In this document: positions 7,679-55,462 of the stretch, piece after piece | Layout: the number at the start of each line of letters is the position of its first letter | Numbering within the stretch: position 1 is the first letter of the stretch | IMG/VR virus record: IMGVR_UViG_3300035703_000010 | Location: 140,652 to 204,651 of that record | Length of the DNA stretch: 64,000 bases | Strand: one strand, 5' to 3' | Notes under the pieces: generated by a model | What the model was told of the DNA's origin: nothing | The model's database searches: none | The model's input: only the letters and a program-made list of their open reading frames with translations | Translations under genes and position numbers: made by a program

Positions 7679-8182
7679 TCATTTTTCTCGTGGCCATTTC
7701 CCTGTAGCTTTATGCATCATCCATGCTGCTGCAGCTGCAGGGTTTTCTGCCCATCCTGATACTTTCTCCATTTTCTTAGCGAAAGTATCAGCTCCTTTTA
7801 ATATTTTCTTTGCCGTTTTTTTGCTTGGGCCTTTTTGCTTTTTCTTTTTTGCTTCAGTCATTGCGCAACCGCATGGTTGTTCGATTTGAGTAGCCATCAT
7901 TCCACATGCTGGGCAAACTCCGCTCATGTCACAAACACATTGTGAAACGGGTAATCCACATCCTTCGCAACTCTGCTCTGATGGCATGCATCCGCACTTT
8001 CCGGCGACGGACATCATTCCGCATGTTGGACAAATGTCACCCATACTATCTTCGTCTAAGTCTCTTGCTCCAATAGCTCCGACAACCTTTATTCCAGGAA
8101 CATCTCCAATTTTTGTTCCCATCTTAGAGTCAATAGGGTCGCCAAACATTTCTAATATTGTTTTTTCTACGTTCTTTTTCAT
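7679..8182 (-). CDS. Cys-rich (CPxCGM..CGC repeats) protein with a basic C-terminal domain
   Basis: Start moved to ATG 8182; three Cys clusters, then TEA-KKKKQKG. Confidence 0.6.
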   Translation of the reverse strand: MKKNVEKTILEMFGDPIDSKMGTKIGDVPGIKVVGAIGARDLDEDSMGDICPTCGMMSVAGKCGCMPSEQSCEGCGLPVSQCVCDMSGVCPACGMMATQIEQPCGCAMTEAKKKKQKGPSKKTAKKILKGADTFAKKMEKVSGWAENPAAAAAWMMHKATGKWPREK

Positions 8183-8216
8183 GAAATTAAATATTCTCAA
8201 TACATAGATTATACAA

Positions 8217-8522
8217 ATGGAATCTGATATTGCTTCTATGAATATCCTTTTATATTTCACCGCGTTTGTTTTAGGATACATCGTAGGGCGTATAACTGGA
8301 AAGCCTGACATCAGCGATCATAGAATCGATGCAAAAGGATCATTTTTTAAACCTGAAATTAGACAAAGAAAGCAAGTTGAAATTGATGAGAAGAAATTTG
8401 TAACATCTGTTTCTACTGATTCTTTAGAACGAAAAGGTAAAGATTTAGGAACGCAAACTATCGTAGAAGATGATCTTGCAACATCTGCATCAAAATTGGC
8501 GATGTTAAAGAAAAACAAGTAG
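8217..8522 (+). CDS. Small single-pass membrane protein upstream of the actin-like gene
   Basis: N-terminal hydrophobic ILLYFTAFVLGYIVG followed by a charged cytoplasmic tail. Confidence 0.6.
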   Translation: MESDIASMNILLYFTAFVLGYIVGRITGKPDISDHRIDAKGSFFKPEIRQRKQVEIDEKKFVTSVSTDSLERKGKDLGTQTIVEDDLATSASKLAMLKKNK

Positions 8523-8547
8523 TATATAATTCATCTAGGAGACAAAC

Positions 8548-9552
8548 ATGGCTAAAGGATTAGACGTCGGTACATCATTTATAGTTCTTGCTGAAGAAGG
8601 CGCAAAAGGAAAAGTTACATACAAAGATTTCCGCGATGCTTTTTATGTCATCAAACCTACAACTCCAATTGCAACAAAGATGATTGAAAAGGGATTAGCA
8701 GGAAAAACTTTCGTTAAGGATGCCGATGGTTCTTTCATCATCCTTGGAAAAGACGCAATTGAGAAGGCAGTCGAGAGAAACGATTCAGCTAAGAGACCGA
8801 TGTATAAAGGCGTAGTTTCTTCAAAAGAAAAAGATGCAAGAAGAATTTTGACTTATATCCTTAAAGAAGTATCAGGAACACCAGCAGAACCAGGAGAAAA
8901 ATTAGTCTTCTGCGTACCAGCTCAACCTGTCGATCAAGAAGATGAGGATTTTGACGTCGGATACCATGAAGACGTAATCGTAAAACTTCTTACAGAAGTT
9001 GGGTATTCAGCACGTGCAATAAATGAGGCCGAAGCTCTTTGTTATTCTGAACTAGAAAAGGATGATTATACTGGAGTGGCTCTATCATGGGGCGCGGGAA
9101 TGGTTAACGTTTGCGTAATGCTCAATGGTGAACCTGTCGTTACTTTCTCTACAACGAAGTCTGGTGACTGGGTTGATCGCATGGCTGCAGTGGCTACTGG
9201 AGAACCTGATTCTATCGTTCAGGCAGAAAAGGAAAATGGAGATTTTACCGTAGGTCAGCCGAATGACAATCAAGTTCTTGCTGCGGTTGCTTCTTATTAT
9301 GATCGTCTAATCGATTACACGACGAAGCAATTGGCATCATCCATGGAAGGACATAAGTCTATTCCAAAGTTCAAGGATCCGCTTCCAGTCGTCGTTGCTG
9401 GAGGAACCTCAAAAGCAAAAGGATTCGTCGATCTTTTTGCAAAGAAACTTAATGAGAATGGTTTTCCGCTTCCTGTCAAAGAAGTTCGTCATGCAGCTGA
9501 TCCACTTCATGCTGTTGCTCGCGGTTGCCTAATCGCTGCGCAAATTATGTAA
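8548..9552 (+). CDS. Actin-like ATPase (MreB/MamK/ParM superfamily)
   Basis: Phosphate-1 GLDVGT, connect-1 INEAEA, phosphate-2 SWGAG, adenosine VAGGTS, connect-2 AVARGCL; SD AGGAG. Confidence 0.88.
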   Translation: MAKGLDVGTSFIVLAEEGAKGKVTYKDFRDAFYVIKPTTPIATKMIEKGLAGKTFVKDADGSFIILGKDAIEKAVERNDSAKRPMYKGVVSSKEKDARRILTYILKEVSGTPAEPGEKLVFCVPAQPVDQEDEDFDVGYHEDVIVKLLTEVGYSARAINEAEALCYSELEKDDYTGVALSWGAGMVNVCVMLNGEPVVTFSTTKSGDWVDRMAAVATGEPDSIVQAEKENGDFTVGQPNDNQVLAAVASYYDRLIDYTTKQLASSMEGHKSIPKFKDPLPVVVAGGTSKAKGFVDLFAKKLNENGFPLPVKEVRHAADPLHAVARGCLIAAQIM

Positions 9553-9573
9553 GTTTATTGTCGAGTTGTTTGG

Positions 9574-9602
9574 AAAGGGCTCCGTGTGGAGCCCTTTTTC
9601 AT
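9574..9602 (+). terminator. Intrinsic terminator after the actin-like gene
   Basis: AAAGGGCTCC-GTGT-GGAGCCCTTT followed by T residues. Confidence 0.85.
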
Positions 9603-9660
9603 TTTAGAATCTTACTGGTGCAAAATATCTTGTCTTTAGGTTACAATATGAAAATAGGTA

Positions 9661-12354: not shown

Positions 12355-12364
12355 ACATATGGGT

Positions 12365-14555: not shown

Positions 14556-14566
14556 AGAGGTATAAT

Positions 14567-15088: not shown

Positions 15089-15092
15089 TATT

Positions 15093-16118: not shown

Positions 16119-16125
16119 GGAAAAA

Positions 16126-21888: not shown

Positions 21889-21916
21889 TCGATAATTACT
21901 TAGAAGCGGAGTTGTT

Positions 21917-25459: not shown

Positions 25460-25480
25460 TAATACTTATCGACATTCGAC

Positions 25481-28060: not shown

Positions 28061-28554
28061 TGTTGAAACGTGATGTGATTACAACTAAAATAGATTTAAA
28101 AGATTTTTTAAGCGGTGTAATTAAAGAATCTCTTCATTCAACGAAAAAAGTGATCAAAGAAGATGAAGAGAAAGAAGCTTTAAAAACTGGCGATGTGTCC
28201 GTAGAAGAAGTCATTGATAAGCTAAATACAATTAGAGCTGGAAAGTCTTTTAAAAGTGAAGAGATAAAATCTGCGATGGAATCTTATTTAAATGATTTAA
28301 ATTCTGCAGAGAAAACAGCTTTATTTGCATTTCTAAAAGGAATTTCTCAAGTTGTTGGTGGCGAGGTTGAAGGAAGCAAAGCCGTAGAACCTCAAGATTC
28401 ACCAGCAAATGTAAAAATGGAAAAGAAACCGTCTTCACAGAAAGTTACAGTTAAGCCAGTCGTAATTAAGAAACCAGAAGCGCAACCAGGTTCTGGCGCG
28501 AAAGGCAAAGAAGATACGACTCCTCCTGTGCCTATTGCACCCAAGAAAAAGTAA
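28057..28554 (+). CDS. Hypothetical protein with a leader-like motif
   Basis: LKDFLSGVIKES; Pro/Lys-rich tail. Confidence 0.55.
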   Translation: MMLKRDVITTKIDLKDFLSGVIKESLHSTKKVIKEDEEKEALKTGDVSVEEVIDKLNTIRAGKSFKSEEIKSAMESYLNDLNSAEKTALFAFLKGISQVVGGEVEGSKAVEPQDSPANVKMEKKPSSQKVTVKPVVIKKPEAQPGSGAKGKEDTTPPVPIAPKKK

Positions 28555-28576
28555 AGTCTAATAAACTTGGTGTATA

Positions 28577-28771
28577 TTGTTATACATGAATACCGATAGC
28601 ACCAAGTTTATTAAACTTCCTAATGGAAACACGTTAGAAGTTTCTATTTTTCCAGGTTTTTTAGAAAAAGTTAAAGAACATTTTTCTTTGAGTAATGTCG
28701 AAGAAGTCAATGATGATCATGTTAGAATGTATATTTATGGTGCATTTAAAAGCGCATTAGATAAGCAATAG
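28577..28771 (+). CDS. Small hypothetical protein
   Basis: 64 aa ORF filling an intergenic gap. Confidence 0.5.
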   Translation: MLYMNTDSTKFIKLPNGNTLEVSIFPGFLEKVKEHFSLSNVEEVNDDHVRMYIYGAFKSALDKQ

Positions 28772-28791
28772 CATGAAAGGAATCATTATAC

Positions 28792-29079
28792 ATGACCACT
28801 CCGATGTTGCAAGAGCTGATAAAACTTATTATCTTACAAGAATCTCGGATTAGAGAAGCTGAAATAACTGGTGATCGCAAGGTTCCATGGGGATCTGAAG
28901 ATCACGTTTCTGACTTAGAGAATCGCTGCGCAAATGTTGAGTATTGGAGAAATAAGTACCCAAGAGGTTCTGCAAAAAGAGATCATTACGGTACAGTTCT
29001 CAAACACCTAAAAAATGAATTAAAATCTGCAAAGAAAGCTGCGCAACATAGACAACTTCACGAAAAAGAAGAGGAATAA
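28792..29079 (+). CDS. Small hypothetical protein with leader motif
   Basis: MLQELIKLIILQES..REAE. Confidence 0.55.
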   Translation: MTTPMLQELIKLIILQESRIREAEITGDRKVPWGSEDHVSDLENRCANVEYWRNKYPRGSAKRDHYGTVLKHLKNELKSAKKAAQHRQLHEKEEE

Positions 29080-31300: not shown

Positions 31301-31367
31301 CTTAATTATACTTCTTGCTTGAGTACGACACTGCGTATTTTCGATAAAATAGGAATATTTTGACTTC

Positions 31368-35987: not shown

Positions 35988-36026
35988 AATCCTATATTTA
36001 TCCTGAAATAATAATAAGTTTATGTT

Positions 36027-40404: not shown

Positions 40405-40467
40405 AAAGTAAATATTTGTTGAAATGCTATAATGCAATTTTTATTGTCTATGTAATATGATTGTTTA

Positions 40468-41523: not shown

Positions 41524-41582
41524 TTTTATTCATGATAATTATCTATCGATAGCCTTTTTTAAACTACTCGATACATATTACC

Positions 41583-45005: not shown

Positions 45006-45131
45006 TTTTGAAGTAAAATAAAAATAAATTACGAACTTTAAAAAAATCGCCGCGGAATTTGATAAATATTTAGACGGCGAATTCGCCATCGCACGCCTTT
45101 CGCTTGAACATAAAAAGAAAGGGCCTTAAGA

Positions 45132-46655
45132 ATGGCAATCTTATCAATAAGAAACTTCGGCAATATACAAATATTGAGAGTTGATTCTAATCCAGAGGGT
45201 ATATCTGCTCCTACAAATTCACTTGCGACAGTATCCACTAGTCGAAACGTTTACAGAAACGTCGGAGGGACTAGCTGGCAATTATTGAATTCTGTTTCTA
45301 TATTACCTCCAGTTGTTCCGAAGCCAGGTTCCGGATCTGGTTCAGGTTCCGGAGGCGCACAAGGTGCTCAAGGAAGAGTTGGGCATCAAGGTCTTCAAGG
45401 CCTTCAAGGATATCAAGGAAGCCAAGGTACTATGGGCACACAAGGTGTTCAAGGTGCACAAGGCGCTTTTGGGTATGGACCTCAAGGAAATAGAGGTCCT
45501 CAAGGCCTTCAAGGCGTCCAAGGTGATGATGGTGTCCAAGGACCTCAAGGTGTTCCAGGATCTCAAGGAGCAACTGGTATTGGAGCTCAAGGATATCAAG
45601 GCCGACCTGGAAATAAAGGAGAAGATGCAACTGAACCTGGTCCTCAAGGTTATCAAGGTCCTCAAGGTAATACAGGACCTGCAGGAACGTCAGGAACTCA
45701 AGGCCTTCAAGGAGCTCAAGGCGTTCAAGGAGCTCAAGGAAGAGTAGGCCCTAACGGGTCTATTGGTCCTCAGGGTCTTCAAGGTGCCCAAGGACGACAA
45801 GGATCAGGCGGAATCGGTCAACAAGGTTCACAAGGATATGATGGTGCGCAAGGTAGATCTGGATCAGCTGGATCTCAAGGTACTCAAGGCGCTCAAGGAC
45901 ATCCTGGATCTGACGAAATTGGAGCTCAAGGTGCTCAAGGAGTTCAAAGCGTAGTTGCAGGCCCTCGAGGATATGCTGGATTAATTGGCCCACAAGGTGG
46001 GATAGGCCCACAAGGCGATACTGGAGCTCAAGGATACGGAATACCAGGTCCTCAAGGTGACGTTGGTGCTCAAGGGCATCAAGGTAGAATCGGTTCGAAT
46101 GGGTTATCAGGAAATACTGGAGATTCTAACGGGTCAGCTTTGATTCTAGTTGAAGCAAAACAAATCAGCACTGGAGTTCAAACAGTAACATTCGAAAATC
46201 TAGATGGAGATTCTGATAGAATTTATTTTATTAGAGGAAGAGTGTTAAGACCAGCAGGATCTGCAGGAACTACATTTACTTATTCAGTTCGTCCTAATGG
46301 ATTAACAACTAATTTAGCTTATATAAGCTACGGTGGATATTATAGCACCGCTGCAGGATCAAACGCTATCTCAACCAGCGCAGGATCTAGTGGGTATTTG
46401 ATAGGTAGCAGCACTTCTACAACAAGATTTGATCTTCAGATGTGGATTTCTGCTGAAAAAACGTTGCCTAGACTCTTCGACATCGCTATTAGCAGAAGAG
46501 TTTTTGATGGATCAAACCAACAATTTGATGTTTGGAGAAGCGGGGTTCGTTGGAATGAAACTACAACGAATTTAACATCAATAGAAATTAACTGTGATAG
46601 ATCTGGCGGTCTTGCTGCTGGAACTGAGCTTTACCTTTATAAATTAGTATGCTGA
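45132..46655 (+). CDS. Collagen-like fibre protein 1 (Gly-X-Gln)
   Basis: Long G-X-Y run dominated by GAQ/GPQ; shared N-domain (LRVD..P.G..NVGGTSW) and C-domain. Confidence 0.88.
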   Translation: MAILSIRNFGNIQILRVDSNPEGISAPTNSLATVSTSRNVYRNVGGTSWQLLNSVSILPPVVPKPGSGSGSGSGGAQGAQGRVGHQGLQGLQGYQGSQGTMGTQGVQGAQGAFGYGPQGNRGPQGLQGVQGDDGVQGPQGVPGSQGATGIGAQGYQGRPGNKGEDATEPGPQGYQGPQGNTGPAGTSGTQGLQGAQGVQGAQGRVGPNGSIGPQGLQGAQGRQGSGGIGQQGSQGYDGAQGRSGSAGSQGTQGAQGHPGSDEIGAQGAQGVQSVVAGPRGYAGLIGPQGGIGPQGDTGAQGYGIPGPQGDVGAQGHQGRIGSNGLSGNTGDSNGSALILVEAKQISTGVQTVTFENLDGDSDRIYFIRGRVLRPAGSAGTTFTYSVRPNGLTTNLAYISYGGYYSTAAGSNAISTSAGSSGYLIGSSTSTTRFDLQMWISAEKTLPRLFDIAISRRVFDGSNQQFDVWRSGVRWNETTTNLTSIEINCDRSGGLAAGTELYLYKLVC

Positions 46656-49150
46656 TGAAAGGAACATGATATGGCTGTTTTATTAAGAAAAAAATTTGGC
46701 ATCATAGACTTGTTAAGAGTTGATGCTGTTCCTGATGGAATAACGGCTCCTGTTAATTCATTGGCAACGTTGTCGACTAATGGAAGCATCTATAAAAACG
46801 TAGGAGGGACTTCATGGCAATTAGTGAGTTCTTCAACGTTACTTCTTCCTTCTAATGATGAAGGTGGACAAGAAGGAGGCGGAGGAGCGGGTTCTCAAGG
46901 CGCTCAAGGAGCAAGAGGCGTACAAGGTGCTCAAGGTGCTCAAGGACCAGTCGGAAATGAAGGTTCAAAAGGAACTTCTGGATTAGGTGGGCCAGGAGGT
47001 GATTCTGGTTCCGGAGCGCAAGGTTTACAAGGGCCTCAAGGATTATTAGGACCACAAGGTCGTCCTGGGATGGTCGGCGCGCAAGGACATCAAGGAGTCC
47101 AAGGAGCAAACGGCGATACTACCCAACAAGGGCCGCAAGGAAATCCTGGAATCAAAGGTGCAGATGGTTCAGATAGCATTGGGTCAATTGGCCCGCAAGG
47201 GTTGCCTGGATCGCAAGGACCTCAAGGACAAAGTTATGCTGGTTATGCTGGACATAGAGGCATGTCAGGAGATACTGGTCCTCAGGGATCTTCTAATAAT
47301 TCTCCAGGATTAACTGGACATACTGGATCACCAGGGCTTCCTGGAGATGGTGTACAAGGACCAGCAGGAAGCCCTGGTGATCCAGGGCCTCAAGGCGAAC
47401 CTGGTAATTCTGGATCTAGAGGTCATCAAGGAGCCCAGGGTATTCAAGGAAATGGAATCCAAGGGCAACAAGGAGCTCAAGGGGATAGAGGACCTCAAGG
47501 AACTATAGGGGTCATAGGGTCGCAAGGATCAATCGGCCCACAGGGCATAATAGGATCTCAAGGAGCTCAAGGTCCAATACTTCAAGGCGCTCAAGGTGTT
47601 CAAGGAAACGTTGGAGCTCAAGGTGATGTTGGAAATCAAGGATCAGCAGGATCTTCAGGAGTTCCAAATAGCGGATTGATATTGATAGAAAGCAAGTATG
47701 TTACTGACTCTGCAGCTTCATCTTTAACATTTTCAGATTTAGATGGAGATGTCGAAAAGAGTTACCTTCTAGTGTATAGATTATATGTTGAAGGATCTTC
47801 CTCAACGTTGTTCAATATTGATCTTAGACCTAACGGACAAACGACAGATATTTCAGGCGTTTACAGAACATCATATTCTTCAACGACGACAAACGGAAGT
47901 TTGTCTTCTCCATTGATCACTTCCGTTAGAGGAACTGGGTATGCTTTCGGAACATTTAGAATTTCAGGAAAAACAGGAATTCCTAGGTTCCTTTTTTCAA
48001 ACTATGTAGGTTATTCTCCTGCTCTTTCTGCTTTCTTTTCAGCCGAAAATGCGGTCTACTGGAATGAAACGACAACAAACTTGACTTCTCTAGTCGTTTT
48101 TGGTTCAAGTTCAGGGGTAGAAAGCTCATGTATAGGAGTTGGTAGCGAGTTTCATCTTTACAAATATGAGGTAGCATAATGTCAGTCTTATCTAGAAGAA
48201 GTTTTGGTAACATTGAATTATTAAGAGTTAATTCAAACCCAGATGGATCTGTAAGTTCTACCGTCGGATCTCTAGCAATAGTTGCATCCACTGGAATTAC
48301 TTACAAAAACGTAGGAGGAACTAGCTGGATAGCGACAAACTCTTCTGGTGTCGGAGGGTCAGGTGCACAAGGTGCGCAAGGAGCACAAGGTTTCATCGGA
48401 CTTCCTGGTGACAGAGGGACTCAAGGAGTTCAAGGTGTTCAAGGTGACGTCGGTTCTCAAGGAGCTCAAGGTGATACAGGAAGCGGTGCTCAAGGCGTTC
48501 AAGGAGACATAGGCCCTCAAGGGGCTCAAGGAATTAGTCCAACAGGAGCCCAAGGCGCTAGAGGATATCAAGGAAATGATGGCTCATATTCACCTCCAGA
48601 GAACATGAGAGGACCACAAGGCGTTCAAGGAGCTCAAGGAAGTTCTGGAGTAAGCCAAAGAGGAACTCAAGGTGTGATTGGGCAAACCGGTCCACAAGGC
48701 GATCCATCTGATGGAGAAATTGGCGCGCAGGGAGCTCAAGGGCTTCCTGGATTTCAAGGCGCTCAGGGATTACCTGGAGAATCTTCGAACGTTCAAGGTC
48801 CTCAAGGTTCTCAAGGCGCTCAAGGATATCAAGGATATGCAGATGGTCCAATGGGTGCCCAAGGCACTCAAGGTTCGCAAGGATCTCCTGGTGCAGCTGG
48901 GCCTCAAGGATATCAAGGCTATCAAGGGTTCGGAGGCGTAGTTGGCCCGCAAGGGCACCAGGGAGCATCAGGCCCACAAGGATATCAAGGTGCTCAAGGT
49001 GTACAAGGACTTACTGGACCTGATGGAAATCCAGGATTCCAAGGGTATCAAGGTCCAGAAGGAGTACAAGGTCCTCAAGGATTACAGGGGCATCAAGGAG
49101 CACAAGGCGTCCAAGGAACAATAGGGTTACAAGGAGTACAAGGATCTGGG
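45350..49150 (+). repeat. Three blocks of 9-nt periodic coding repeats (..CAAGG..)
   Basis: Recurrent GCTCAAGG/CCTCAAGG/TTCAAGG from Gly-X-Gln codons at about 45350-46130, 46890-47660 and 48360-49150. Confidence 0.85.
46671..48179 (+). CDS. Collagen-like fibre protein 2
   Basis: Same tripartite architecture. Confidence 0.88.
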   Translation: MAVLLRKKFGIIDLLRVDAVPDGITAPVNSLATLSTNGSIYKNVGGTSWQLVSSSTLLLPSNDEGGQEGGGGAGSQGAQGARGVQGAQGAQGPVGNEGSKGTSGLGGPGGDSGSGAQGLQGPQGLLGPQGRPGMVGAQGHQGVQGANGDTTQQGPQGNPGIKGADGSDSIGSIGPQGLPGSQGPQGQSYAGYAGHRGMSGDTGPQGSSNNSPGLTGHTGSPGLPGDGVQGPAGSPGDPGPQGEPGNSGSRGHQGAQGIQGNGIQGQQGAQGDRGPQGTIGVIGSQGSIGPQGIIGSQGAQGPILQGAQGVQGNVGAQGDVGNQGSAGSSGVPNSGLILIESKYVTDSAASSLTFSDLDGDVEKSYLLVYRLYVEGSSSTLFNIDLRPNGQTTDISGVYRTSYSSTTTNGSLSSPLITSVRGTGYAFGTFRISGKTGIPRFLFSNYVGYSPALSAFFSAENAVYWNETTTNLTSLVVFGSSSGVESSCIGVGSEFHLYKYEVA

Positions 49151-49645
49151 TTTTCTGACCAGGACTTAGTTTTATTAGAAAGCATATACGTTACTGGATC
49201 TGCGGCATCTTCAGTTACGTTTTCTAACTTAGATGGAAACACGGATAGAATGTATCTCATGGTCTACACAATAAAAGTTGGTGGCCCTTCAACGGGAGTC
49301 AACTATGACATTTCGATAAGGCCAAACAATTTAACCACAAATCAAGTTAGCTTCTTTAACGTAGCTTCTTCTGCAGGAATAGGACGTGGTTATTATTCTC
49401 CTATATTATTATCTAGAAACGCAAAAGGTACGACGCTGTTCGGAATGGTCGAAATAGCTGCGCAAACATCAGCGCAAAGAATATTCTCTATTAGATACAC
49501 TGCAACAACAGCAGTTACTGGCACGGCTTTTGGACATTGGAATGAAACTTCTACAAATTTGACTTCATTAGTCATCACGTCGGGTACATCCAGCACTTTA
49601 GACGTTGGTAGCGAATTCCACCTGTACAAGTATGCCACTGCATGA
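48179..49645 (+). CDS. Collagen-like fibre protein 3
   Basis: Same tripartite architecture; start overlaps the previous stop. Confidence 0.88.
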   Translation: MSVLSRRSFGNIELLRVNSNPDGSVSSTVGSLAIVASTGITYKNVGGTSWIATNSSGVGGSGAQGAQGAQGFIGLPGDRGTQGVQGVQGDVGSQGAQGDTGSGAQGVQGDIGPQGAQGISPTGAQGARGYQGNDGSYSPPENMRGPQGVQGAQGSSGVSQRGTQGVIGQTGPQGDPSDGEIGAQGAQGLPGFQGAQGLPGESSNVQGPQGSQGAQGYQGYADGPMGAQGTQGSQGSPGAAGPQGYQGYQGFGGVVGPQGHQGASGPQGYQGAQGVQGLTGPDGNPGFQGYQGPEGVQGPQGLQGHQGAQGVQGTIGLQGVQGSGFSDQDLVLLESIYVTGSAASSVTFSNLDGNTDRMYLMVYTIKVGGPSTGVNYDISIRPNNLTTNQVSFFNVASSAGIGRGYYSPILLSRNAKGTTLFGMVEIAAQTSAQRIFSIRYTATTAVTGTAFGHWNETSTNLTSLVITSGTSSTLDVGSEFHLYKYATA

Positions 49646-49705
49646 TTTTAGAAAAAAATCGATAAAATGTCTTCAGTACAACAATAAACAAATTATTTCA
49701 ATTTT

Positions 49706-50122
49706 ATGAGAGGCATTTCCGAGGTACATGGATATGACTTGATAAAAAGAGTTGCCAACGAAAAGCTCAATGAAAAGAATAATAAGTCAAGAGTTTGGTC
49801 TGAAGAGATGCAAAGTTGGGGGTTTTTTTCTAAAAACCCCAATGAAAATGACGTTTTTTTGATAATCGGATGTTGTAGTCCTGGGGATATGTTTATTCCC
49901 ACGATGGAAAATCCTCATTTGTTTTTATTCAGCGTTCCGGATTGTAATTTTGTAGAAAGCGTAAATCAAAATAATCCTCACATTATCTTGAAATTAACTG
50001 AATTTTTTTCAAATGGATCTCATGTGTATGGTCTTGAAATGTTAGGATCAAATCCACCAAAAGTCGTGCAGCTCTTGGCATATCATAAAACTTTATTTAA
50101 GATCGCTTGGGAGTCTTTGTGA
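49706..50122 (+). CDS. Hypothetical protein
   Basis: 138 aa ORF. Confidence 0.5.
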   Translation: MRGISEVHGYDLIKRVANEKLNEKNNKSRVWSEEMQSWGFFSKNPNENDVFLIIGCCSPGDMFIPTMENPHLFLFSVPDCNFVESVNQNNPHIILKLTEFFSNGSHVYGLEMLGSNPPKVVQLLAYHKTLFKIAWESL

Positions 50123-50137
50123 GAAATAATTACCCCT

Positions 50138-50410
50138 ATGGATGAAGCTTTGCATCCTGGTCTTCGTTTTTGTGTTGGAGACATCGTCATTCCGTCTAAA
50201 CGATCTTATCCAATTTTGCTTAGATCAGGGCCATACGAAAAAATTTCTAATTGGGAATCATGTCCATCATGGGTTTATGGTACGACTGCTGTCATTGTCG
50301 ATATAAAAATTGATATGCAAAGCATAGGAGAAGTCATGGTAAAGATCATGACTCCTACAGCGACGGGGTGGACTGATTGGTGGAATTTGTCTCACTGCTT
50401 AGACATGTGA
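50138..50410 (+). CDS. Small SH3-like hypothetical protein
   Basis: FCVGDIVI..AVIV..VKIMT..GW; ATAATTA 5 nt upstream. Confidence 0.55.
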   Translation: MDEALHPGLRFCVGDIVIPSKRSYPILLRSGPYEKISNWESCPSWVYGTTAVIVDIKIDMQSIGEVMVKIMTPTATGWTDWWNLSHCLDM

Positions 50411-50787: not shown

Positions 50788-50793
50788 AACTCT

Positions 50794-51108: not shown

Positions 51109-51113
51109 CAAGA

Positions 51114-51248
51114 TTAACTATTGCAGTTATTCATCTTTTTATGTTGTTTTGACTCTGCGATTTTTGAAACGCAAACATTGACTGAAGTTATCGCATACAT
51201 CAATAAAATCATAAACATGTAAGGATGATGTTCGATCCATGCATTCAT
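51114..51248 (-). CDS. Small membrane protein (44 aa, not in the ORF track)
   Basis: MNAWIEHHPYMFMILLMYAITSVNVCV..; fills the gap after infA. Confidence 0.45.
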   Translation of the reverse strand: MNAWIEHHPYMFMILLMYAITSVNVCVSKIAESKQHKKMNNCNS

Positions 51249-51254
51249 GTTTAA

Positions 51255-51473: not shown

Positions 51474-51699
51474 GTCCTGATAACGACCACTCTTTTTCAT
51501 ATTTTGTTTCTTCATTCTCCTTATCAATATCATTTTCATCACCAGAATCTGATCCTAGACCTGGTGGAACACCGTAGTTTATTCCCTTGCTGGGTTTATT
51601 AAGTTTTGCACCATCAGCTGAGATACCAGCAGACCATCTAAGGTTTCTCTCAACTTCTTCCCTTATCATCTTTCTCAGATTTGACATTCTTATTTTCAT
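51466..51699 (-). CDS. Small protein with leader motif
   Basis: MKIRMSNLRKMIREEV. Confidence 0.6.
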   Translation of the reverse strand: MKIRMSNLRKMIREEVERNLRWSAGISADGAKLNKPSKGINYGVPPGLGSDSGDENDIDKENEETKYEKEWSLSGHE

Positions 51700-52051
51700 G
51701 ATTCATACCTATTTCAAGATTCATGAGTTGTAATTCTTTTGAAGAATTTAAAATGTCTTCTGAATCGACTGTAACAATCATGTCATCTAAAATAAATTCT
51801 AAAATAGAACCATTGTTCACTGGATAAACTTCTAGAATATTTTTCTTGCAATTAAAAAATTGATCAGTATTCATTTCCTTTAAACGTCCAGAAGAAGTAA
51901 GAATGATTAATTCTTGGGTTTTAGGATGTATACCGCACGAAACAATTGCGCTGTTTCCATCATCATAAAAAACTTCTAATGTATTCATATATGAAGGAAG
52001 ATCAATTTCGCAATTTCCATGGATAGAATATGAAGGACTATTTTCTGACAT
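51650..52051 (-). CDS. Hypothetical protein
   Basis: 133 aa ORF in operon. Confidence 0.45.
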   Translation of the reverse strand: MSENSPSYSIHGNCEIDLPSYMNTLEVFYDDGNSAIVSCGIHPKTQELIILTSSGRLKEMNTDQFFNCKKNILEVYPVNNGSILEFILDDMIVTVDSEDILNSSKELQLMNLEIGMNHENKNVKSEKDDKGRS

Positions 52052-52275
52052 TAAACTACCTTTGATAACTCGCTTGAAAGAAAAGGACCTTCTATTAAAT
52101 CTTCAAAAAGAACATAATGATTCCAACAATAACTTTCAGAAACATTTTCTACATGTTTACTAGGATAATTGTTTGATGGTTTCGAAGACACAACAATACC
52201 ACATTTAGGTTTAAAGATATGATATACTAAGTCTCCGTTGTTTATTTTGCTTAACAAATTATACCTTAGAATCAT
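52051..52275 (-). CDS. Small hypothetical protein
   Basis: NGDLVYH..GIVV; coupled. Confidence 0.45.
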   Translation of the reverse strand: MILRYNLLSKINNGDLVYHIFKPKCGIVVSSKPSNNYPSKHVENVSESYCWNHYVLFEDLIEGPFLSSELSKVV

Positions 52276-53869
52276 TTAAAACTACGGCGTCTAAAGTCAT
52301 GAAAAGTTTTGCTACAGAAGTTGAATTTTTCAATGCTGTCTTAGTCACTTTTGCTGGATCAATAATTCCTGCTGAAATTAAATTGATAAACTTTCCTGTA
52401 GATGCATCATATCCTAGTCTTTGTTCTTTGTTTCTTGCCATTTCTTCTTCAACGACGTCAGCAGACTTATCTGAATTTTCAACAATTCTTCTTAAAGGCG
52501 CCTTACAAGCCTTAAGAACAACTTCTATACCAGCAAGAATATCTCTATCATAATCATTCTGCAATAGAACTGTCTTTGCTTCTTCTGCTGCGTAAAAAAG
52601 AGCTGAACCGCCGCCTGGAACAATTCCATCTTCAGCTGCTGCTCTTGTTGCATGTAAAGCATCTTCAATTCGATACTTTCTTTCAATCATTTCAATTTCT
52701 GTTGCACCACCGACCTTAATGATAGCAACACCAGAAGCTAATCTCGCAATTCTCATTTTTAAAATTGAAAGTTCTTCTTGGCTTAGCGTAATATCAGCCG
52801 ATCTGTTTCTTAGATCTTCTACATAAGAACTTACGTTTTCTTGAGTTGATTCGACACCAACAATAGTCGTTGATTTTGCATCAACGATAACTTTTTTCAT
52901 TTTGCCGAGTTCATTTAATGTCGTTTTTTCAAGAGAAGTTCCGTTTGTGCTCGAAATTAAAGTTGCTCCAGTTAGGACGCAAATGTCATTCAAGTAATCT
53001 GTTTTTGATGGACCGAATCCAGGAGCTTTGATTGCAATCACTTGAAGCTGAGTTTTTACTCTATTCAAAACCAATCCTTGTAGAGCTTCTCCTTCTACAT
53101 CATCAGCGATGATTAATAGAGGTTTTCTTGCTTCTAAAGTTCTTTCTAGAACTGGAAGGATGTCTTTAATCGTCGAGATTTTCTTGTCAGTAACTAGAAC
53201 ATATGCATCGTTATAACATGCATGCATTTTTTCATTATTTGTTACGAAATAAGGCGATAGATACCCTCTATCAAATTGCATGCCGTCGACGACATCAAGA
53301 GCAGTTGTCGTTCCTTTTGCGTCCTCTACAGTAATGATTCCGTCTCTTCCAACCTTTTCCATTGCCGAAGCGAGGATTTCTCCTATTTTTTCATCACCGT
53401 TTGCACTGATCGTGCCAATTTGTTTAATTTTTTCTGATGATTCTACTGGAGTTGACATTACTGACAAAAAGCTAGTTATCGTTTTAGTAGCTATGTCTAA
53501 TCCTTCGCATAACTTTTTAGAGTTATACCCAGCATCTAGAAGTTTCATTCCTTCTTTTACTAACGCGTGAGTAAGAACAGTAGAAGTAGTTGTACCATCG
53601 CCAGCAACATCATTGGTTTGAGAAGCTGCTTCTCTAAGTAGCTGAGCTCCCATCATTTCAAGAGGATCTGATAGTTTTACTGATTTGCTTACAGTAACTC
53701 CATCTTTAGTGACGATAGGAGAATTATTGCCGTTTTGGATTAGAACAGTCTTTCCGTTGGGTCCTAGCGTGCAGCTTACTGCTTCTGCAGCTAATCTCAA
53801 TCCATTATAAAGCTTTTTTCTTGCGTCTTTAGAAAAGACAATTCCTTCTACTTTAGTTTCAACATTCAT
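52259..53869 (-). CDS. groEL: Chaperonin GroEL (group I)
   Basis: TLGPNG, VTKDGVTV, AGDGTTTST, GMQFDRGYLSPYF, KVGGATE, VPGGG, GIIDPAKV; no GGM tail; start moved to ATG 53869. Confidence 0.97.
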   Translation of the reverse strand: MNVETKVEGIVFSKDARKKLYNGLRLAAEAVSCTLGPNGKTVLIQNGNNSPIVTKDGVTVSKSVKLSDPLEMMGAQLLREAASQTNDVAGDGTTTSTVLTHALVKEGMKLLDAGYNSKKLCEGLDIATKTITSFLSVMSTPVESSEKIKQIGTISANGDEKIGEILASAMEKVGRDGIITVEDAKGTTTALDVVDGMQFDRGYLSPYFVTNNEKMHACYNDAYVLVTDKKISTIKDILPVLERTLEARKPLLIIADDVEGEALQGLVLNRVKTQLQVIAIKAPGFGPSKTDYLNDICVLTGATLISSTNGTSLEKTTLNELGKMKKVIVDAKSTTIVGVESTQENVSSYVEDLRNRSADITLSQEELSILKMRIARLASGVAIIKVGGATEIEMIERKYRIEDALHATRAAAEDGIVPGGGSALFYAAEEAKTVLLQNDYDRDILAGIEVVLKACKAPLRRIVENSDKSADVVEEEMARNKEQRLGYDASTGKFINLISAGIIDPAKVTKTALKNSTSVAKLFMTLDAVVLNDSKV

Positions 53870-53911
53870 ATAATGTGATAATAGTAAGGTCTTTATCAAT
53901 CTTGTACACGG

Positions 53912-54235
53912 TTATGCTTTAGTTACTTGAATATAAACCGGTTGACCTCTTCTCCATGCCAGTGCGACATCACCTTTCATATAGTCATGTAATAAAGCGT
54001 AAAGAACCATCTTTTGTTGAGCATCATCAATAGTGTCGATATAGCGCTCAAGCTTTTTTTGTGAATAATCAATTAAATTCTTTCTTTTTCCAGAAAGAAT
54101 TGTCTGCTGACTAACATGCAAAGTAAACTCAGTGCATGAACCAAGTTTTGTATTTTGACCTTTAATGCCGTTAGTTCTCATTTTAAGCTTATTATCTACT
54201 GAAGCTTGTTCATAAGTAGTATTCGTTCCAAACAT
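53912..54235 (-). CDS. Hypothetical protein
   Basis: 107 aa, with SD GGAG and an upstream promoter. Confidence 0.55.
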   Translation of the reverse strand: MFGTNTTYEQASVDNKLKMRTNGIKGQNTKLGSCTEFTLHVSQQTILSGKRKNLIDYSQKKLERYIDTIDDAQQKMVLYALLHDYMKGDVALAWRRGQPVYIQVTKA

Positions 54236-54267
54236 TTATATTAAATCTCCATCCTCTATAGAAGATG

Positions 54268-54296
54268 ATTATAAACTAAATCAATGTTAGTAACAA
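54268..54296 (-). promoter_or_regulatory. Sigma70-like promoter driving the 53912/groEL unit
   Basis: TTGTTA-N17-TATAAT on the minus strand. Confidence 0.65.
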
Positions 54297-54316
54297 TTAC
54301 ACTAAATAAAAAATAT

Positions 54317-55210
54317 TTATTTTTTATCATATTTTCGTGACATTTTATATGCTTTTTCCTTTGGAATGCCACCAGAAACATATACTCTCATCTTATAATC
54401 AGCAGAATCTACATCACCATCTTTATCGATATCTAATTCATCATTATGCTTACTGTCTGATAATTCTTTTTCTTCTTCAACAATTTCTTTGATCATCTTT
54501 CTAAGATCACTAATGCTTATTGATTCTAAAAACTTTGGAGTTTGTTTCGAATACATGGGAACTTGAAGTTCAGGAGCAATCTCAGTTTGTTTTCCATATC
54601 CTGCAATATATTTTGAAGGCTGTTCAATTTCTTGTTGATATAACCCGTTTATAGTATCACGAATAAACTTTTTTAATTTTAACTCGTGTCCACCGCTCGT
54701 GCCTTCACCACGTCCAGGATCGACTGACATATGCCATTGAACAACTTTTTCTTCGATGTATCTTCTGAACTCAGGATCTAATTTTAATGGTGAATCTTTT
54801 TTAAGATTGTCATCACGAACAAGCATGTTTTCGAGAGTATCATACAATAAGTCATCGTCATATCCACCGGGGATTGAAAAAACATGCTTTTCTAATTCAT
54901 CTTTTGACAAAAAAAACTTTGCATCTTTTTTTGTTGGAGCAGCAAGAAATGCAGCTTCTTTACCTTCGGGGCTCATTAAAGTTGTAATAGCTTCTCTAAT
55001 TAACTGGCGTAATTCTGATAAACGAATTTGCATGGTTGAATTTCTTTCTACACTTTCTGCTTCTATTGCCGCGATTTGCCCTCTAGCTTTTTTGCGAGAC
55101 GTATGACAAGCTCTGTGCTTTTTCCCCTTTTTATCAGTATAAGATAGAACGTGGGTTCCTCTTTTTCCTGAAGACTGCTTACATTTCTGTTTTCTTATCT
55201 TATAAGGCAT
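54317..55210 (-). CDS. Multi-module hypothetical protein with two internal leader motifs and an EF-hand-like loop
   Basis: Basic N-domain; MQIRLSELRQLIREA (55033); ISISDLRKMIKEI; DIDKDGDVDSAD. Confidence 0.6.
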   Translation of the reverse strand: MPYKIRKQKCKQSSGKRGTHVLSYTDKKGKKHRACHTSRKKARGQIAAIEAESVERNSTMQIRLSELRQLIREAITTLMSPEGKEAAFLAAPTKKDAKFFLSKDELEKHVFSIPGGYDDDLLYDTLENMLVRDDNLKKDSPLKLDPEFRRYIEEKVVQWHMSVDPGRGEGTSGGHELKLKKFIRDTINGLYQQEIEQPSKYIAGYGKQTEIAPELQVPMYSKQTPKFLESISISDLRKMIKEIVEEEKELSDSKHNDELDIDKDGDVDSADYKMRVYVSGGIPKEKAYKMSRKYDKK

Positions 55211-55217
55211 AGGGTAA

Positions 55218-55433
55218 TTATTTCTTGCTAGTCGATAGACCCATATCTTTTGCCCACTTTTTTATTTTCTTTTTTATATCGTCTGGAACGTAAACGCTTC
55301 CAGCATTAAAAGCAGAATCATCTAATAGTTCTTCATCATATTGTTCTTCAGGATGTGAACCACCCCTAGATTTATGCGCAGTTACAAACTCTCTTATTAA
55401 TTTTCTTAACATAAGCTCTTCTTTTAAATTCAT
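55218..55433 (-). CDS. Small protein with leader motif
   Basis: MNLKEELMLRKLIREFV; SVYVPDDIK..I.KW..DMGL. Confidence 0.6.
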   Translation of the reverse strand: MNLKEELMLRKLIREFVTAHKSRGGSHPEEQYDEELLDDSAFNAGSVYVPDDIKKKIKKWAKDMGLSTSKK

Positions 55434-55462
55434 GTGGATACTTATGTTTGAGGTGCGGACAA

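What the first reader, a model, noticed from the sequence alone, without database searches (positions are those of the whole stretch)
8182..55445. ATANNTA element 4-7 nt upstream of ten start codons: candidate late promoter giving leaderless mRNAs
Seen (motif position; start; gap): 8188-8194(-); 8182; 5. 31303-31309(-); 31297; 5. 35995-36001(-); 35987; 7. 40409-40415(-); 40404; 4. 41571-41577(+); 41583; 5. 50126-50132(+); 50138; 5. 51115-51121(-); 51108; 6. 51706-51712(-); 51699; 6. 55215-55221(-); 55210; 4. 55439-55445(-); 55433; 5. There is no room for a spaced SD in any of these. Further copies with longer leaders lie at 810, 21892, 25462, 36661, 41536, 45062, 56765 and 57406. Established: the T4 late promoter TATAAATA contains ATAAATA and starts transcription a few nt downstream. 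Inference: a degenerate gp55-like -10-only promoter whose start site coincides with the AUG. In DNA this AT-rich the 5 fixed bases occur by chance every few hundred nt (rough estimate), so the tight spacing is the real signal.
Basis: partly seen in the sequence, partly recalled or inferred. Interest (0 to 1): 0.78.

Follow-up and report, generated by a model that had tools for sequence, protein, structure and literature searches.

The report
Phage promoter abutting start codons
A short conserved DNA signal (ATAnTTA) in an uncultured freshwater giant phage and its relatives behaves like the phage's own promoter, and in about one gene in twelve it sits exactly 5-6 bases before the start codon, so those genes are probably transcribed as leaderless messages without a ribosome-binding site.

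Summary
ATANNTA 4-7 nt before a called start occurs 9 times in the window against 1.5 in local shuffles, and 16 against 3.3 in the whole 204.6-kb phage record.

The same peak, sharpest at a gap of 5, appears independently in two related phages (22 vs 3.5 and 16 vs 2.8). An unbiased motif search recovers ATAnTTA from SD-less upstream regions. Orthologues keep motif and spacing while the flanks diverge (14/19 against 6/212).

The same motif is also the top de novo motif 12-45 nt upstream of operon-head genes in all five phages examined. There it precedes SD-bearing leaders, follows terminators, and sometimes precedes tRNA genes. It therefore behaves as a promoter -10-type element, not a ribosome-binding signal.

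Spacing is bimodal: about 5 nt without SD, or 15 nt or more with SD. Gap-5 sites carry pyrimidine at -1 and A at +1, which fits transcription starting on the ATG.

A diverged sigma factor lies elsewhere in the genome; its best sequence match is T4 gp55. No gp33 or gp45 homologue was found, so this is not a T4-type late system.

No transcript data exist. The start site, the "late" timing and the sigma assignment are inferred.

The parts
8188..8194 (-). ATATTTA, 5 nt before ATG 8182 (167 aa). Head of a divergent pair, 34 nt from the start of the + gene at 8217. Leaderless class.
   Evidence: Orthologues in G001 (ATACTTA-5-ATG) and G002 (ATATTTA-5-ATG) keep motif and gap while the flanks differ.
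31303..31309 (-). ATAATTA before ATG 31297 (gap 5). ATGs also lie at 31300 (gap 2) and 31291. Leaderless class, start ambiguous.
   Evidence: The G001 orthologue aligns only from residue 24, so the start is not confirmed.
35995..36001 (-). ATAAATA, 7 nt before ATG 35987 (217 aa, weak NMN-adenylyltransferase-like N-terminus). Divergent pair with 36027(+).
   Evidence: G001 keeps ATAAATA-7-ATG.
40409..40415 (-). ATATTTA, 4 nt before ATG 40404 (247 aa). Divergent junction.
   Evidence: No orthologue in G001-G004, so conservation is untested.
41571..41577 (+). ATACATA, 5 nt before GTG 41583 (950 aa, tail-fibre-like). Divergent pair with 41520(-).
   Evidence: G001/L024 keeps ATACATA-5-GTG and the N-terminus TTQIKG. 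The ORF has no upstream alternative start.
50126..50132 (+). ATAATTA, 5 nt before ATG 50138 (90 aa). Lies 15 nt after the stop of ORF 49706-50122. Internal position.
   Evidence: G001 has ATACTTA-5-ATG, with NN and spacer changed and the gap kept. The 15-mer ATAATTACCCCTATG recurs twice in G001.
51115..51121 (-). ATAGTTA, 6 nt before ATG 51108 (104 aa). A TTG lies at 51111.
   Evidence: Identical in L023/L024 (G001 lineage). Absent in the second-tier relatives.
51706..51712 (-). ATAGGTA, 6 nt before ATG 51699 (77 aa). Lies inside the 3' end of the upstream gene 51650-52051.
   Evidence: ATAG[GA]TA at gap 6-7 is kept in four lineages. The coding constraint of the overlapped gene is a confounder.
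55215..55221 (-). ATAATTA, 4 nt before ATG 55210 (297 aa). The TAA inside it is the stop codon of gene 55218-55433. Weakest site.
   Evidence: The start MPY(K/T)IRKQKC is conserved in more than 15 loci. The motif is kept only in the closest relatives. Distant orthologues have SDs instead.
55439..55445 (-). ATAAGTA, 5 nt before ATG 55433 (71 aa). Divergent junction. Best-conserved site.
   Evidence: ATA[AG][GA]TA at a gap of exactly 5 in six lineages, with ATG or GTG starts and unrelated upstream sequence.
59924..59930 (+). ATACATA, 6 nt before ATG 59937 (645 aa, phrog_22605).
   Evidence: Kept at gap 5-6 in G001 and G002. G004-lineage loci L038/L039 have a GGAG SD instead and G003 lacks the motif.
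768..816 (+). Intrinsic terminator (hairpin 768-791, T-run 792-802), then ATAATTA (810-816), then a 24-nt leader with GGTGA SD and ATG 841. Leadered promoter copy.
   Evidence: The terminator / motif / SD-leader order is conserved in G001 and G002 while the flanks diverge.
21892..21898 (+). ATAATTA, 18-nt leader with GGAG SD, ATG 21917. Leadered promoter copy.
   Evidence: The motif is conserved in G001 and G002; G001 keeps a GGAG SD, the G002 leader shows no GGAG.
25462..25468 (+). ATACTTA, 12 nt before ATG 25481, no SD. Predicted 7-nt leader.
   Evidence: Gap 12 is conserved in G001 (ATACTTA) and G002 (ATAGTTA).
56765..56772 (.). Palindromic ATATATAT in the divergent spacer. Reads as the motif for 56754(-) at gap 11, and for 56789/56801(+) with an AAGG SD leader.
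   Evidence: Kept in six lineages. Orthologues of the + gene in G002, L026 and L029 have ATA[CT]ATA-5-ATG instead, a switch between leadered and leaderless.
41536..41546 (-). ATAGATAATTA: two overlapping copies 15 and 19 nt before ATG 41520 (122 aa), no SD.
   Evidence: Not conserved in G001, so it may be chance.
45062..45068 (+). ATAAATA, 63 nt before ATG 45132, the first of three collagen-like tail-fibre genes.
   Evidence: Not confirmed in G001. Uncertain.
57406..57412 (+). ATAGGTA, 19 nt before ATG 57432 (388 aa), followed by cTTATAATc and an AAGG SD.
   Evidence: The motif is absent in G001 and present at gap 16 in G004. The TATAAT-like box is the conserved part in G001 and G002.

Best explanation
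**What it is.** The class is shared by this uncultured freshwater jumbo phage and its relatives. It has no -35 element.

**How it probably works.** Transcription is inferred to start about 6 nt after the motif, with pyrimidine at -1 and purine at +1.

**Two arrangements.**
- Most copies lie 15-45 nt before a gene. They give an ordinary leader with a Shine-Dalgarno sequence.
- In this phage and its two closest relatives, about 8-12% of called genes have the motif 4-7 nt before the ATG or GTG, mostly 5 nt. The predicted start then falls on the first base of the start codon, so the mRNA is leaderless. That explains why these genes have no SD.

[quoted passage not shown] It is 250 aa, at record position 28140-28892(-), outside the window. 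Its sigma-2 domain is most similar in sequence to T4 gp55.

**Shown:**
- the motif, its spacing and its statistical excess;
- its evolutionary conservation;
- its promoter-like contexts;
- the presence of the sigma gene.

**Inferred:**
- the exact start site;
- the pairing of sigma and motif;
- the temporal class (middle or late);
- translation of these messages without a leader.
For: **1. Positional excess, replicated.** Window 9 vs 1.5; G000 16 vs 3.3; G001 22 vs 3.5; G002 16 vs 2.8 in local dinucleotide shuffles. Gap histograms peak at 5.

**2. De novo recovery.** ATAnTTAnt emerges from SD-less proximal regions.

**3. Conservation.**
- 14 of 19 orthologue pairs keep the motif at gap 4-7, against 6 of 212 for other genes (Fisher 4e-14).
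- Flank identity is about 57%, so chance retention of five bases would be about 6%.
- Individual families keep the exact gap across up to six lineages, with ATG/GTG and NN changes.

**4. Promoter-like behaviour.**
- The same motif is the top de novo motif in non-coding -55..-13 of operon heads. In G003+G004 it is ngATAtTTA (56.8 vs 30 or less) and in G000-2 ATAnTTaT (68 vs 30 or less), at variable distance.
- It is followed by SD leaders in 63-88% of cases.
- It is sense-biased in co-directional spacers, 199 vs 121.
- An intrinsic terminator lies within 60 nt upstream in 13 of 237 motif genes, against 7 of 921 (p 1.6e-5). This includes terminator-motif-5/6 nt-ATG cases at G002 261277 and G004 250000.
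- Four tRNA genes have it 8-10 nt upstream (expected 0.45).
- Leadered copies at 810, 21892 and 25462 are conserved in G001 and G002.

**5. Start-site geometry.**
- Gaps 0-3 are essentially absent. Gaps 8-14 are sparse and SD-less. Gaps of 15 or more carry an SD.
- Position -1 is a pyrimidine in 26 of 29 gap-5 sites and never G (p 7e-5).
- In leadered copies of G003/G004, Y then R is weakly enriched at motif +11/+12.
- The register equals T4's TATAAATA, with A at -12 (PMC7892883, PMC2988020).

**6. SD and leaderless arrangements swap at orthologous genes.** Seen for 59937, 55210 and 56789.

**7. Sigma candidate.**
- phrog_234 'late sigma transcription factor', E 3e-7 in four of five records.
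- Best PDB profile hit is T4 gp55, E 0.0099.
- AlphaFold model, pLDDT 77.
- All top 50 structural matches are sigma factors: gp55 Z 10.6, and sigma-2 fragments at 2.3-2.9 A.
Against: - No transcript 5' ends are available. The single possible RNA run gave only low-depth fragmentary contigs, indistinguishable from the DNA runs.
- 39% of gap-4-7 sites are internal to same-strand gene strings. Only 61% are at operon heads, against 51% of all genes, so head enrichment is weak.
- Three window sites overlap or abut the upstream gene's end (50126, 51706, 55215). Coding or stop-codon constraints could contribute there.
- Four of 54 sites use GTG, which is a poor leaderless start codon in E. coli-type systems. 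The host is unknown.
- G003 and G004 carry the sigma and the motif but lack the gap-5 peak. The leaderless arrangement is therefore clade-specific and not intrinsic to the promoter.
- The sigma-to-motif assignment is by analogy only. A host sigma could read the motif.
- The sequence link between the sigma candidate and gp55 is weak (E about 1e-2 to 1e-7). The protein also has a second, sigma-4-like domain, although no -35 is conserved.
- The degenerate 5-base pattern has many chance copies. Outside the proximal peak, G000 shows little excess over a reversed-pattern control.
Confidence: 0.65

Rival explanations
1. The motif is a -10-type promoter element, but the host's own sigma factor reads it rather than the phage-encoded sigma. 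On this view it is a housekeeping sigma with a TAnnnT-like or AT-rich -10 preference, as in Deinococcota and Actinobacteria, where a -10 box next to the ORF gives leaderless mRNAs. The leaderless reading is unchanged.
For: - -10 motifs placed a few bp before ORFs that drive leaderless mRNAs are a host-encoded feature in Deinococcus-Thermus (PMC12340547).
- ATAnTTA can be read as xATAnT plus TA, a TATAAT-like hexamer with a 7-8-nt discriminator.
- The sigma-to-motif link here is only by analogy.
Against: - In the sigma-70 register, the position that should be T(-12) is T in only 13 of 54 sites.
- T(-7) would be only 63-72% conserved.
- The near-invariant TA would fall in the discriminator.
- Canonical host-type boxes are seen separately in these phages: TGTTATAAT and TTGACA before tRNA genes, and TGTATAAT upstream of 8182. 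This suggests two promoter classes.
- A conserved phage sigma is present in four of five records.
Confidence: 0.17
2. At the proximal sites the motif acts in the RNA, not the DNA. It would be an SD-independent, A/U-rich ribosome-recruitment or translational-coupling signal placed 5 nt before the start codon on ordinary leadered or polycistronic mRNAs.
For: - 39% of proximal sites are internal to same-strand gene strings.
- Several abut or overlap the upstream gene's stop (50126, 51706, 55215), where termination-reinitiation could operate.
- A/U-rich upstream tracts are known translation enhancers (my general knowledge).
Against: - The identical motif is the top de novo motif at variable distances of 12-45 nt, upstream of leaders that carry their own SD.
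- It follows terminators.
- It precedes some tRNA genes, which are not translated.
- An RNA signal does not predict the empty 0-3 nt zone, the pyrimidine at -1, or the 8-14 nt trough.
- No complementarity to the 16S 3' end is apparent.
Confidence: 0.1
3. The motif marks an RNA-processing site. An endoribonuclease cuts a few nt after AUAnUUA, trimming polycistronic RNAs to leaderless or short-leader messages and releasing tRNAs.
For: - It would explain internal sites and motif copies 8-10 nt before tRNA genes.
- Nuclease-generated leaderless mRNAs are known (MazF in E. coli, my general knowledge).
Against: - Copies directly downstream of intrinsic terminators, where little upstream transcript should exist, are enriched about sevenfold.
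- At divergent junctions only 34-60 nt wide there is no upstream transcript to process unless a promoter lies inside the neighbouring gene.
- No candidate nuclease was sought.
Confidence: 0.04
4. The pattern is a by-product of AT-rich, stop-codon-rich spacers and start-codon miscalls, with no function.
For: - The pattern has only five fixed bases.
- TAA/TAG-containing words are depleted in coding DNA, so any upstream region is enriched for them.
- EM on G000 alone over -45..-1 found nothing above shuffles.
Against: - Local shuffles that keep each region's dinucleotides give z 6-10.
- The reversed-pattern control shows no peak.
- The peak is replicated in two unseen genomes.
- The motif is recovered de novo.
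- It is retained across orthologues with diverged flanks.
- Starts are confirmed by conserved N-termini.
Confidence: 0.02

Closest known systems
Leaderless middle/late transcripts of Thermus thermophilus phage phiYS40 (Sevostyanova et al. 2007, J Mol Biol 366:420; summarised in PMC3594737)
   Same: A large lytic phage in which a class of phage promoters sits directly before the ORFs. Many non-early mRNAs therefore lack a leader and an SD. Some genes of the same phage keep ordinary SD leaders.
   Different: - In phiYS40 the 5' ends were mapped experimentally. Here nothing is mapped.
- phiYS40 uses the host RNAP holoenzyme in a host phylum where leaderless mRNAs are common. Here the host is unknown, and a phage-encoded sigma is the likely reader.
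- phiYS40 shifts the host IF2/IF3 balance. No such function was looked for here.
T4 late promoters (TATAAATA) read by gp55 with gp33 and the gp45 sliding clamp (PMC2988020, PMC7892883)
   Same: - A -10-only element with no -35.
- The same register if the start is 6 nt after the motif: A at -12 and TA at -7/-6.
- An AT-rich melting segment.
- A phage sigma whose sigma-2 domain is the best sequence match to gp55.
   Different: - The consensus is ATAnTTA, not TATAAATA. AA at the NN positions occurs in only 3 of 54 sites, and no T precedes the motif.
- No gp33 or gp45 homologue is detectable, even in the 92-100% complete relatives.
- The sigma is 250 aa with a second, sigma-4-like domain.
- T4 late mRNAs have SD-bearing leaders (my general knowledge).
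-10 motif (TANNNT) adjacent to ORFs giving leaderless mRNAs in Deinococcus-Thermus (PMC12340547), and likewise in Actinobacteria (PMC4633059)
   Same: A -10-type box with a strict short spacing to the start codon and no RBS. It coexists with a second gene class that uses GGAG-type SDs. The two-motif picture found by MEME upstream of ORFs there is what was found here.
   Different: Those are cellular genomes read by the housekeeping sigma. The motif TANNNT differs from ATAnTTA in register. Here the arrangement is viral, clade-specific, and toggles with SD leaders between orthologues.

Membership tests
T4-type late transcription system | 8-bp TATAAATA box about one helical turn upstream of the start, with no -35 conservation | tested here: inconclusive
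   A -10-only element with no upstream conservation is met. The sequence is ATAnTTA, with NN=AA in 3 of 54 sites, and the base before the motif is rarely T. The register matches only if the unmapped start is 6 nt downstream.
T4-type late transcription system | gp55: small diverged sigma with a sigma-R2 homology domain plus a helix-loop-helix | tested here: inconclusive
   - A 250-aa protein hits phrog_234 (E 3e-7 and 1e-5).
- Its best PDB profile hit is gp55 7d7c_F (E 0.0099).
- Structural Z is 10.6 to gp55 over 125 residues.
- It also aligns over both domains to sigma-E and sigma-H, so it is a sigma-70-family protein but not clearly a gp55 orthologue.
T4-type late transcription system | Co-activator gp33 and sliding clamp gp45 | tested here: not met
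   phrog_254 (gp33) and phrog_223 (gp45) give no match at E<=1 in any of the five records, including the 92% and 100% complete ones. Very diverged analogues cannot be excluded.
T4-type late transcription system | Drives late (virion structural) genes after DNA replication | not testable with these tools
   Structural genes do carry the motif: three tail-sheath paralogues with leaders and the tail-fibre-like 41583. Many small genes of unknown function carry it too. No timing data exist.
Leaderless-mRNA promoters (-10 box adjacent to the ORF) | -10-type element at a fixed short distance (about 5-8 nt) from the start codon | tested here: met
   54 sites in three genomes: gap 5 (29), 6 (15), 4 (6), 7 (4). 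Gaps 0-3 are nearly empty.
Leaderless-mRNA promoters (-10 box adjacent to the ORF) | No Shine-Dalgarno sequence; AUG strongly preferred | tested here: met
   There is no room for an SD. 50 of 54 starts are ATG and 4 are GTG. My caller's prior favours ATG, so the ATG share is soft evidence.
Leaderless-mRNA promoters (-10 box adjacent to the ORF) | Primary transcript 5' end on the first base of the start codon | not testable with these tools
   No RNA data are available. Indirect support comes from pyrimidine at -1 and A at +1 in 26 of 29 gap-5 sites.
Housekeeping sigma-70 -10 hexamer (TATAAT / TANNNT) | T(-12), A(-11) and T(-7) as the best-conserved positions, often with a -35 or TG extension | tested here: not met
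   - In the sigma-70 register T(-12) is T in 13 of 54 sites and T(-7) in 63-72%.
- The invariant TA would fall in the discriminator.
- No -35 or TG is conserved.
- A TTGACA-17-TATAAT scan is not enriched (56 vs 60).
Non-SD ribosome-binding motif | Fixed position relative to the start codon only; absent from untranslated genes and from positions upstream of SD leaders | tested here: not met
   The same motif occurs at variable distance upstream of SD leaders and before four tRNA genes.

The most novel reading that the evidence does not exclude
A widespread clade of freshwater jumbo phages encodes its own two-domain, gp55-like sigma factor. Its sigma family has more than 1,500 homologues in metagenomes, all unannotated. 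The sigma reads a -10-only ATAnTTA promoter without gp33 or a clamp. One sub-clade has moved many of these promoters onto start codons, creating a phage-controlled leaderless regulon. Evolution toggles genes in and out of it by swapping the abutting promoter for an SD leader. This may be coupled to a phage-induced shift of the host translation apparatus towards leaderless initiation, as in phiYS40.
Probability: 0.3. Interest if true: 0.7.

Novelty: new variant of a known kind. Interest (0 to 1): 0.55.

Why it matters
- **Annotation.** It gives a usable promoter model, and probable transcription-unit boundaries, for an abundant but uncultured group of freshwater jumbo phages whose genes are almost all unannotated.
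- **SD-less genes.** It explains why about a fifth of their SD-less genes lack a ribosome-binding site.
- **Sigma family.** It identifies a large unannotated protein family as sigma factors.
- **Evolution.** Orthologous genes switch between leaderless and SD-led expression, which offers a natural comparative series.
- **If confirmed.** It would be only the second well-documented phage system built around leaderless non-early mRNAs, and the first with a phage-encoded sigma.

Tried and rejected
- **Phage RNA polymerase (phiKZ/AR9-like).** No Rpb2_6 or Rpb1_2 match in the record. Rejected, although the record is only about 60% complete.
- **Sigma searches.** Pfam Sigma70_r2 found nothing and phrog_12791 found nothing. 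The sigma surfaced only through phrog_234.
- **EM on G000 alone.** Run on -45..-1 of its 102 SD-less genes, it found nothing above shuffles. The motif emerged only with a narrower window and three genomes.
- **EM on -60..-14 including coding sequence.** It returned only coding-composition patterns.
- **Sigma-70 consensus scan.** Not enriched. Whole-window shuffles for TGNTATAAT and ATANTTAN5ATG were uninformative.
- **Known phage relatives.**
  - Megablast found no relative.
  - The best polymerase hits were below 30% identity.
- **Transcript evidence.** Two run searches and one read-laying produced no usable RNA.
- **tRNA-cluster promoter test in G002.** The head of the 12-tRNA cluster has no motif. 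Only four isolated tRNA genes do.
- **Host.** Could not be inferred.
- **phiYS40 primary paper.** Not held, so I cite a review for it.

Full report
**Context**

The window is bases 140652-204651 of a 204,651-bp linear IMG/VR virus record, estimated about 60% complete. GC is about 36-37%.

It is a tailed jumbo phage. Identified genes include:
- a DnaE-like polymerase, GroEL and three collagen-like tail-fibre genes in the window;
- three tail-sheath paralogues, an SbcC-like nuclease and ribonucleotide reductase elsewhere;
- a gp25-like baseplate protein.

It has no close relative among deposited phages. Near-identical DNA occurs in subsurface, groundwater and freshwater metagenomes.

**Checking the observation**

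All ten motif/start pairs are exactly as described. I built a motif-blind gene caller based on a periodic Markov coding score. Eight of the ten starts coincide with its calls.

About half the genes have a good AGGAG-type SD, and the rest have none.

Counting ATANNTA by distance to the called start gives a sharp peak. Gaps 0-3 are empty, gap 5 is the mode, then 6, 4 and 7.

Against dinucleotide-preserving shuffles of each gene's own 30-nt upstream region:
- the window has 9 genes with the motif at gap 4-7, against 1.5 +/- 1.2;
- the whole record has 16, against 3.3 +/- 1.7;
- none of 500 shuffles reached either value.

A reversed-pattern control shows no peak.

The search for related loci with the 297-aa protein that starts at 55210 returned syntenic relatives. 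I fetched four whole records:

| Record | Size | Relation to the window phage |
|---|---|---|
| G001 | 211 kb | 60-90% aa identity |
| G002 | 278 kb | 45-70% aa identity |
| G003 | 281 kb | more distant |
| G004 | 284 kb | more distant |

G001 and G002 show the same peak, 22 vs 3.5 (z 9.9) and 16 vs 2.8 (z 8.2). G003 and G004 do not.

An unbiased EM motif search used the -22..-1 region of the 309 SD-less genes of G000-G002. It returns ATAnTTAnt:
- base frequencies A .94, T .95, A .90, n, T .74, T .95, A .88;
- log-likelihood 63.7, against 28 or less for shuffles;
- about 22% of the sequences carry it, with the mode at a 5-nt gap.

**Conservation**

Starts are confirmed by conserved N-termini. 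For example, MPY(K/T)IRKQKC is present in more than 15 loci.

The motif and its gap persist while flanks, NN and spacer letters change:

| Start | What is kept |
|---|---|
| 55433 | ATA[AG][GA]TA at exactly 5 nt in six lineages, with ATG or GTG |
| 8182 | ATATTTA, ATACTTA and ATATTTA at gap 5 in three genomes |
| 41583 | ATACATA-5-GTG in two genomes |
| 50138 | ATAATTA changes to ATACTTA, gap 5 kept |
| 59937 | ATACATA at gap 5-6 in three genomes |
| 51699 | gap 6-7 in four lineages |
| 35987 | gap 7 in two genomes |

Overall, 14 of 19 orthologue pairs retain the arrangement, against 6 of 212 for genes without it (Fisher 4e-14). Flank identity in those pairs is about 57%, so chance retention of five bases would be about 6%.

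Where the motif is lost, an SD appears instead:
- 59937: GGAG in the G004-lineage loci L038 and L039;
- 55210: GAGG, AAGG or GGAG in distant loci;
- 15800 and 47301: SDs in G002.

The gene at 56789 has an SD leader here but ATA[CT]ATA-5-ATG in G002, L026 and L029.

**Promoter or ribosome signal?**

Several independent lines point to a DNA promoter element.

1. De novo EM on purely non-coding -55..-13 regions of operon-head genes recovers the same motif.
   - G003+G004: ngATAtTTA, 56.8 against 30 or less.
   - G000-G002: ATAnTTaT, 68 against 30 or less.
   - Distances from the start are variable, 12-45 nt.
2. In G003 and G004 the motif is followed by a leader with an obvious SD in 66 of 75 cases. 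One copy directly follows a tRNA 3' end.
3. At 810 the order terminator, motif, SD leader is preserved in all three.
4. A strict intrinsic terminator lies within 60 nt upstream of the motif in 13 of 237 motif-bearing genes, against 7 of 921 others (p 1.6e-5). Two cases have only the motif and 5-6 nt between terminator and ATG (G002 261277 and G004 250000).
5. Four tRNA genes have the motif 8-10 nt before the mature 5' end (expected 0.45).
6. In co-directional spacers the sense orientation outnumbers the antisense, 199 to 121.

An RNA-level ribosome signal predicts none of these.

**Where transcription would start**

The aggregate spacing is bimodal:
- gaps 0-3 are nearly empty;
- there is a peak at 5-6;
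- gaps 8-14 form a sparse zone without an SD;
- gaps of 15 nt or more mostly carry an SD.

This is what a fixed start about 6 nt after the motif predicts. A start codon cannot lie upstream of the start site, and a leader is either absent or long enough to hold an SD.

At the 29 gap-5 sites position -1 is C or T in 26 and never G, and it is followed by the A or G of the start codon (p 7e-5). This is the pyrimidine(-1)/purine(+1) preference of bacterial RNAP.

Leadered copies in G003 and G004 show the same tendency, more weakly, at motif +11/+12.

No -35 is conserved.

With a start on the ATG, the register is A(-12) T A n T T(-7) A(-6). That is the register of T4's TATAAATA, whose A(-12) enters a gp55 pocket (PMC7892883). 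T4 late promoters likewise lack a -35 (PMC2988020).

**The sigma factor**

The record has no phage RNAP subunits and no Pfam Sigma70_r2 hit.

The PHROG family of T4 gp55 (phrog_234) matches a 250-aa ORF at record position 28140-28892(-), and its orthologues in G002, G003 and G004, at E about 1e-7. G001 is incomplete.

Further evidence on this protein:
- A profile of the four orthologues finds T4 gp55 as the best chain in the PDB (E 0.0099, residues 19-134 against 7-128). The tyrosine corresponding to gp55 pocket residue Y97 is invariant.
- An AlphaFold model from 21 homologues has pLDDT 77.
- Its top Foldseek matches are nearly all sigma factors, as are all top 50 VIA-align matches.
  - gp55: Z 10.6, 4.2 A over 125 residues.
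  - Sigma-2 fragments: 2.3-2.9 A.
  - Sigma-E aligns over both domains.
- The family has more than 1,500 members in metagenomes, all unannotated.

It is therefore a sigma-70-family protein with two domains. It is not a clear gp55 orthologue.

gp33 and gp45 families are undetectable in all five records. This is not the T4 late system.

That this sigma reads ATAnTTA is an inference. It rests on co-occurrence, on the non-canonical register of the motif, and on the presence of separate host-type boxes (TGTTATAAT and TTGACA before tRNA genes, TGTATAAT upstream of 8182).

**Caveats**

- There are no transcript data. The only candidate RNA run behaved like low-depth DNA contigs.
- Proximal sites are only mildly enriched at operon heads (61% against 51%).
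- Three window sites touch the upstream gene's end: 50126, 51706 and 55215. Site 55215 contains that gene's TAA and is the weakest.
- The start at 31297 is ambiguous. The site at 40409 has no orthologue.
- GTG starts (4 of 54) are poor leaderless initiators in E. coli-type systems, and the host is unknown.
- 'Late' timing is suggested only by the presence of the motif before tail-sheath and tail-fibre-like genes.

**Comparison with known systems**

- The closest functional analogue is Thermus phage phiYS40, most of whose middle and late mRNAs are leaderless (PMC3594737).
- The general principle, a -10 box adjacent to the ORF, has been validated in Deinococcus-Thermus (PMC12340547) and is common in mycobacteria (PMC4633059).
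- The closest mechanistic analogue for promoter recognition is T4 gp55/TATAAATA, but defining co-factors are missing and the consensus differs.

I rate this a new variant of a known kind. It is real and conserved, and it is useful for annotating an abundant uncultured phage clade. It still awaits 5'-end mapping.

Noticed in passing
G000:C1:28140-28892 (-), outside the window; locus L100:1099-1851:-: A 250-aa two-domain sigma-70-family protein. Its best sequence match is T4 gp55. It has more than 1,500 unannotated homologues in freshwater metagenomes and no Pfam domain. It sits in an operon after a GT4-type glycosyltransferase.
   Followed up: yes
window 45132-49645 (+): Three tandem paralogous collagen-like tail-fibre genes (507, 502 and 488 aa). 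They have ordinary SDs, and two are separated by 0-15 nt.
   Followed up: partly
G000:C1:102281-111697 (+) (L008:6281-15697): Three consecutive tail-sheath paralogues (1016, 1016 and 1039 aa). Each is preceded by its own leadered ATAnTTA copy, and the third also by a terminator.
   Followed up: partly
window 52259-53899 (-): A phage-encoded GroEL chaperonin (phrog_5725, E 1e-151), 70-89% identical in the relatives. Its N-terminal 8-10 residues and its start are not conserved among lineages.
   Followed up: no
G002:C1:57515-79024 (L056-L057): A 21.5-kb stretch of 57% GC inside a 43% GC phage record. It lies next to a 12-tRNA cluster and is not called by the phage-trained coding model. It may be a foreign island or a chimeric assembly.
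   Followed up: partly
G001:C1:142906-143363 (L050) and window 50126-50140: The exact 15-mer ATAATTACCCCTATG occurs twice within 450 nt in G001 and once in the window. A near copy, ATAATTAATCCCATG, lies between the two G001 copies. This looks like a small array of short genes, each with the same abutting promoter.
   Followed up: no
window 8209-8216 (-) and G001 orthologous site: A conserved TGTATAAT / aaTATAAT host-type -10 box lies 14 nt upstream of the ATATTTA of gene 8182. The gene may have two stacked promoters, an early host-type one and the phage-type one.
   Followed up: no
G004:C1:248233-248474 (-) and G001 tRNA genes: Several phage tRNA genes are preceded by canonical host-type promoter boxes: TGTTATAAT in G004, and TTGACA or TTAACA in G001. 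This suggests a separate, probably early, promoter class in the same phages.
   Followed up: partly
window 54317-55210 (-): A 297-aa protein with a strikingly conserved N-terminus, MPY(K/T)IRKQKCKQSDG. It is found in more than 15 jumbo-phage contigs of 140-285 kb. It has no PHROG match and its function is unknown.
   Followed up: partly
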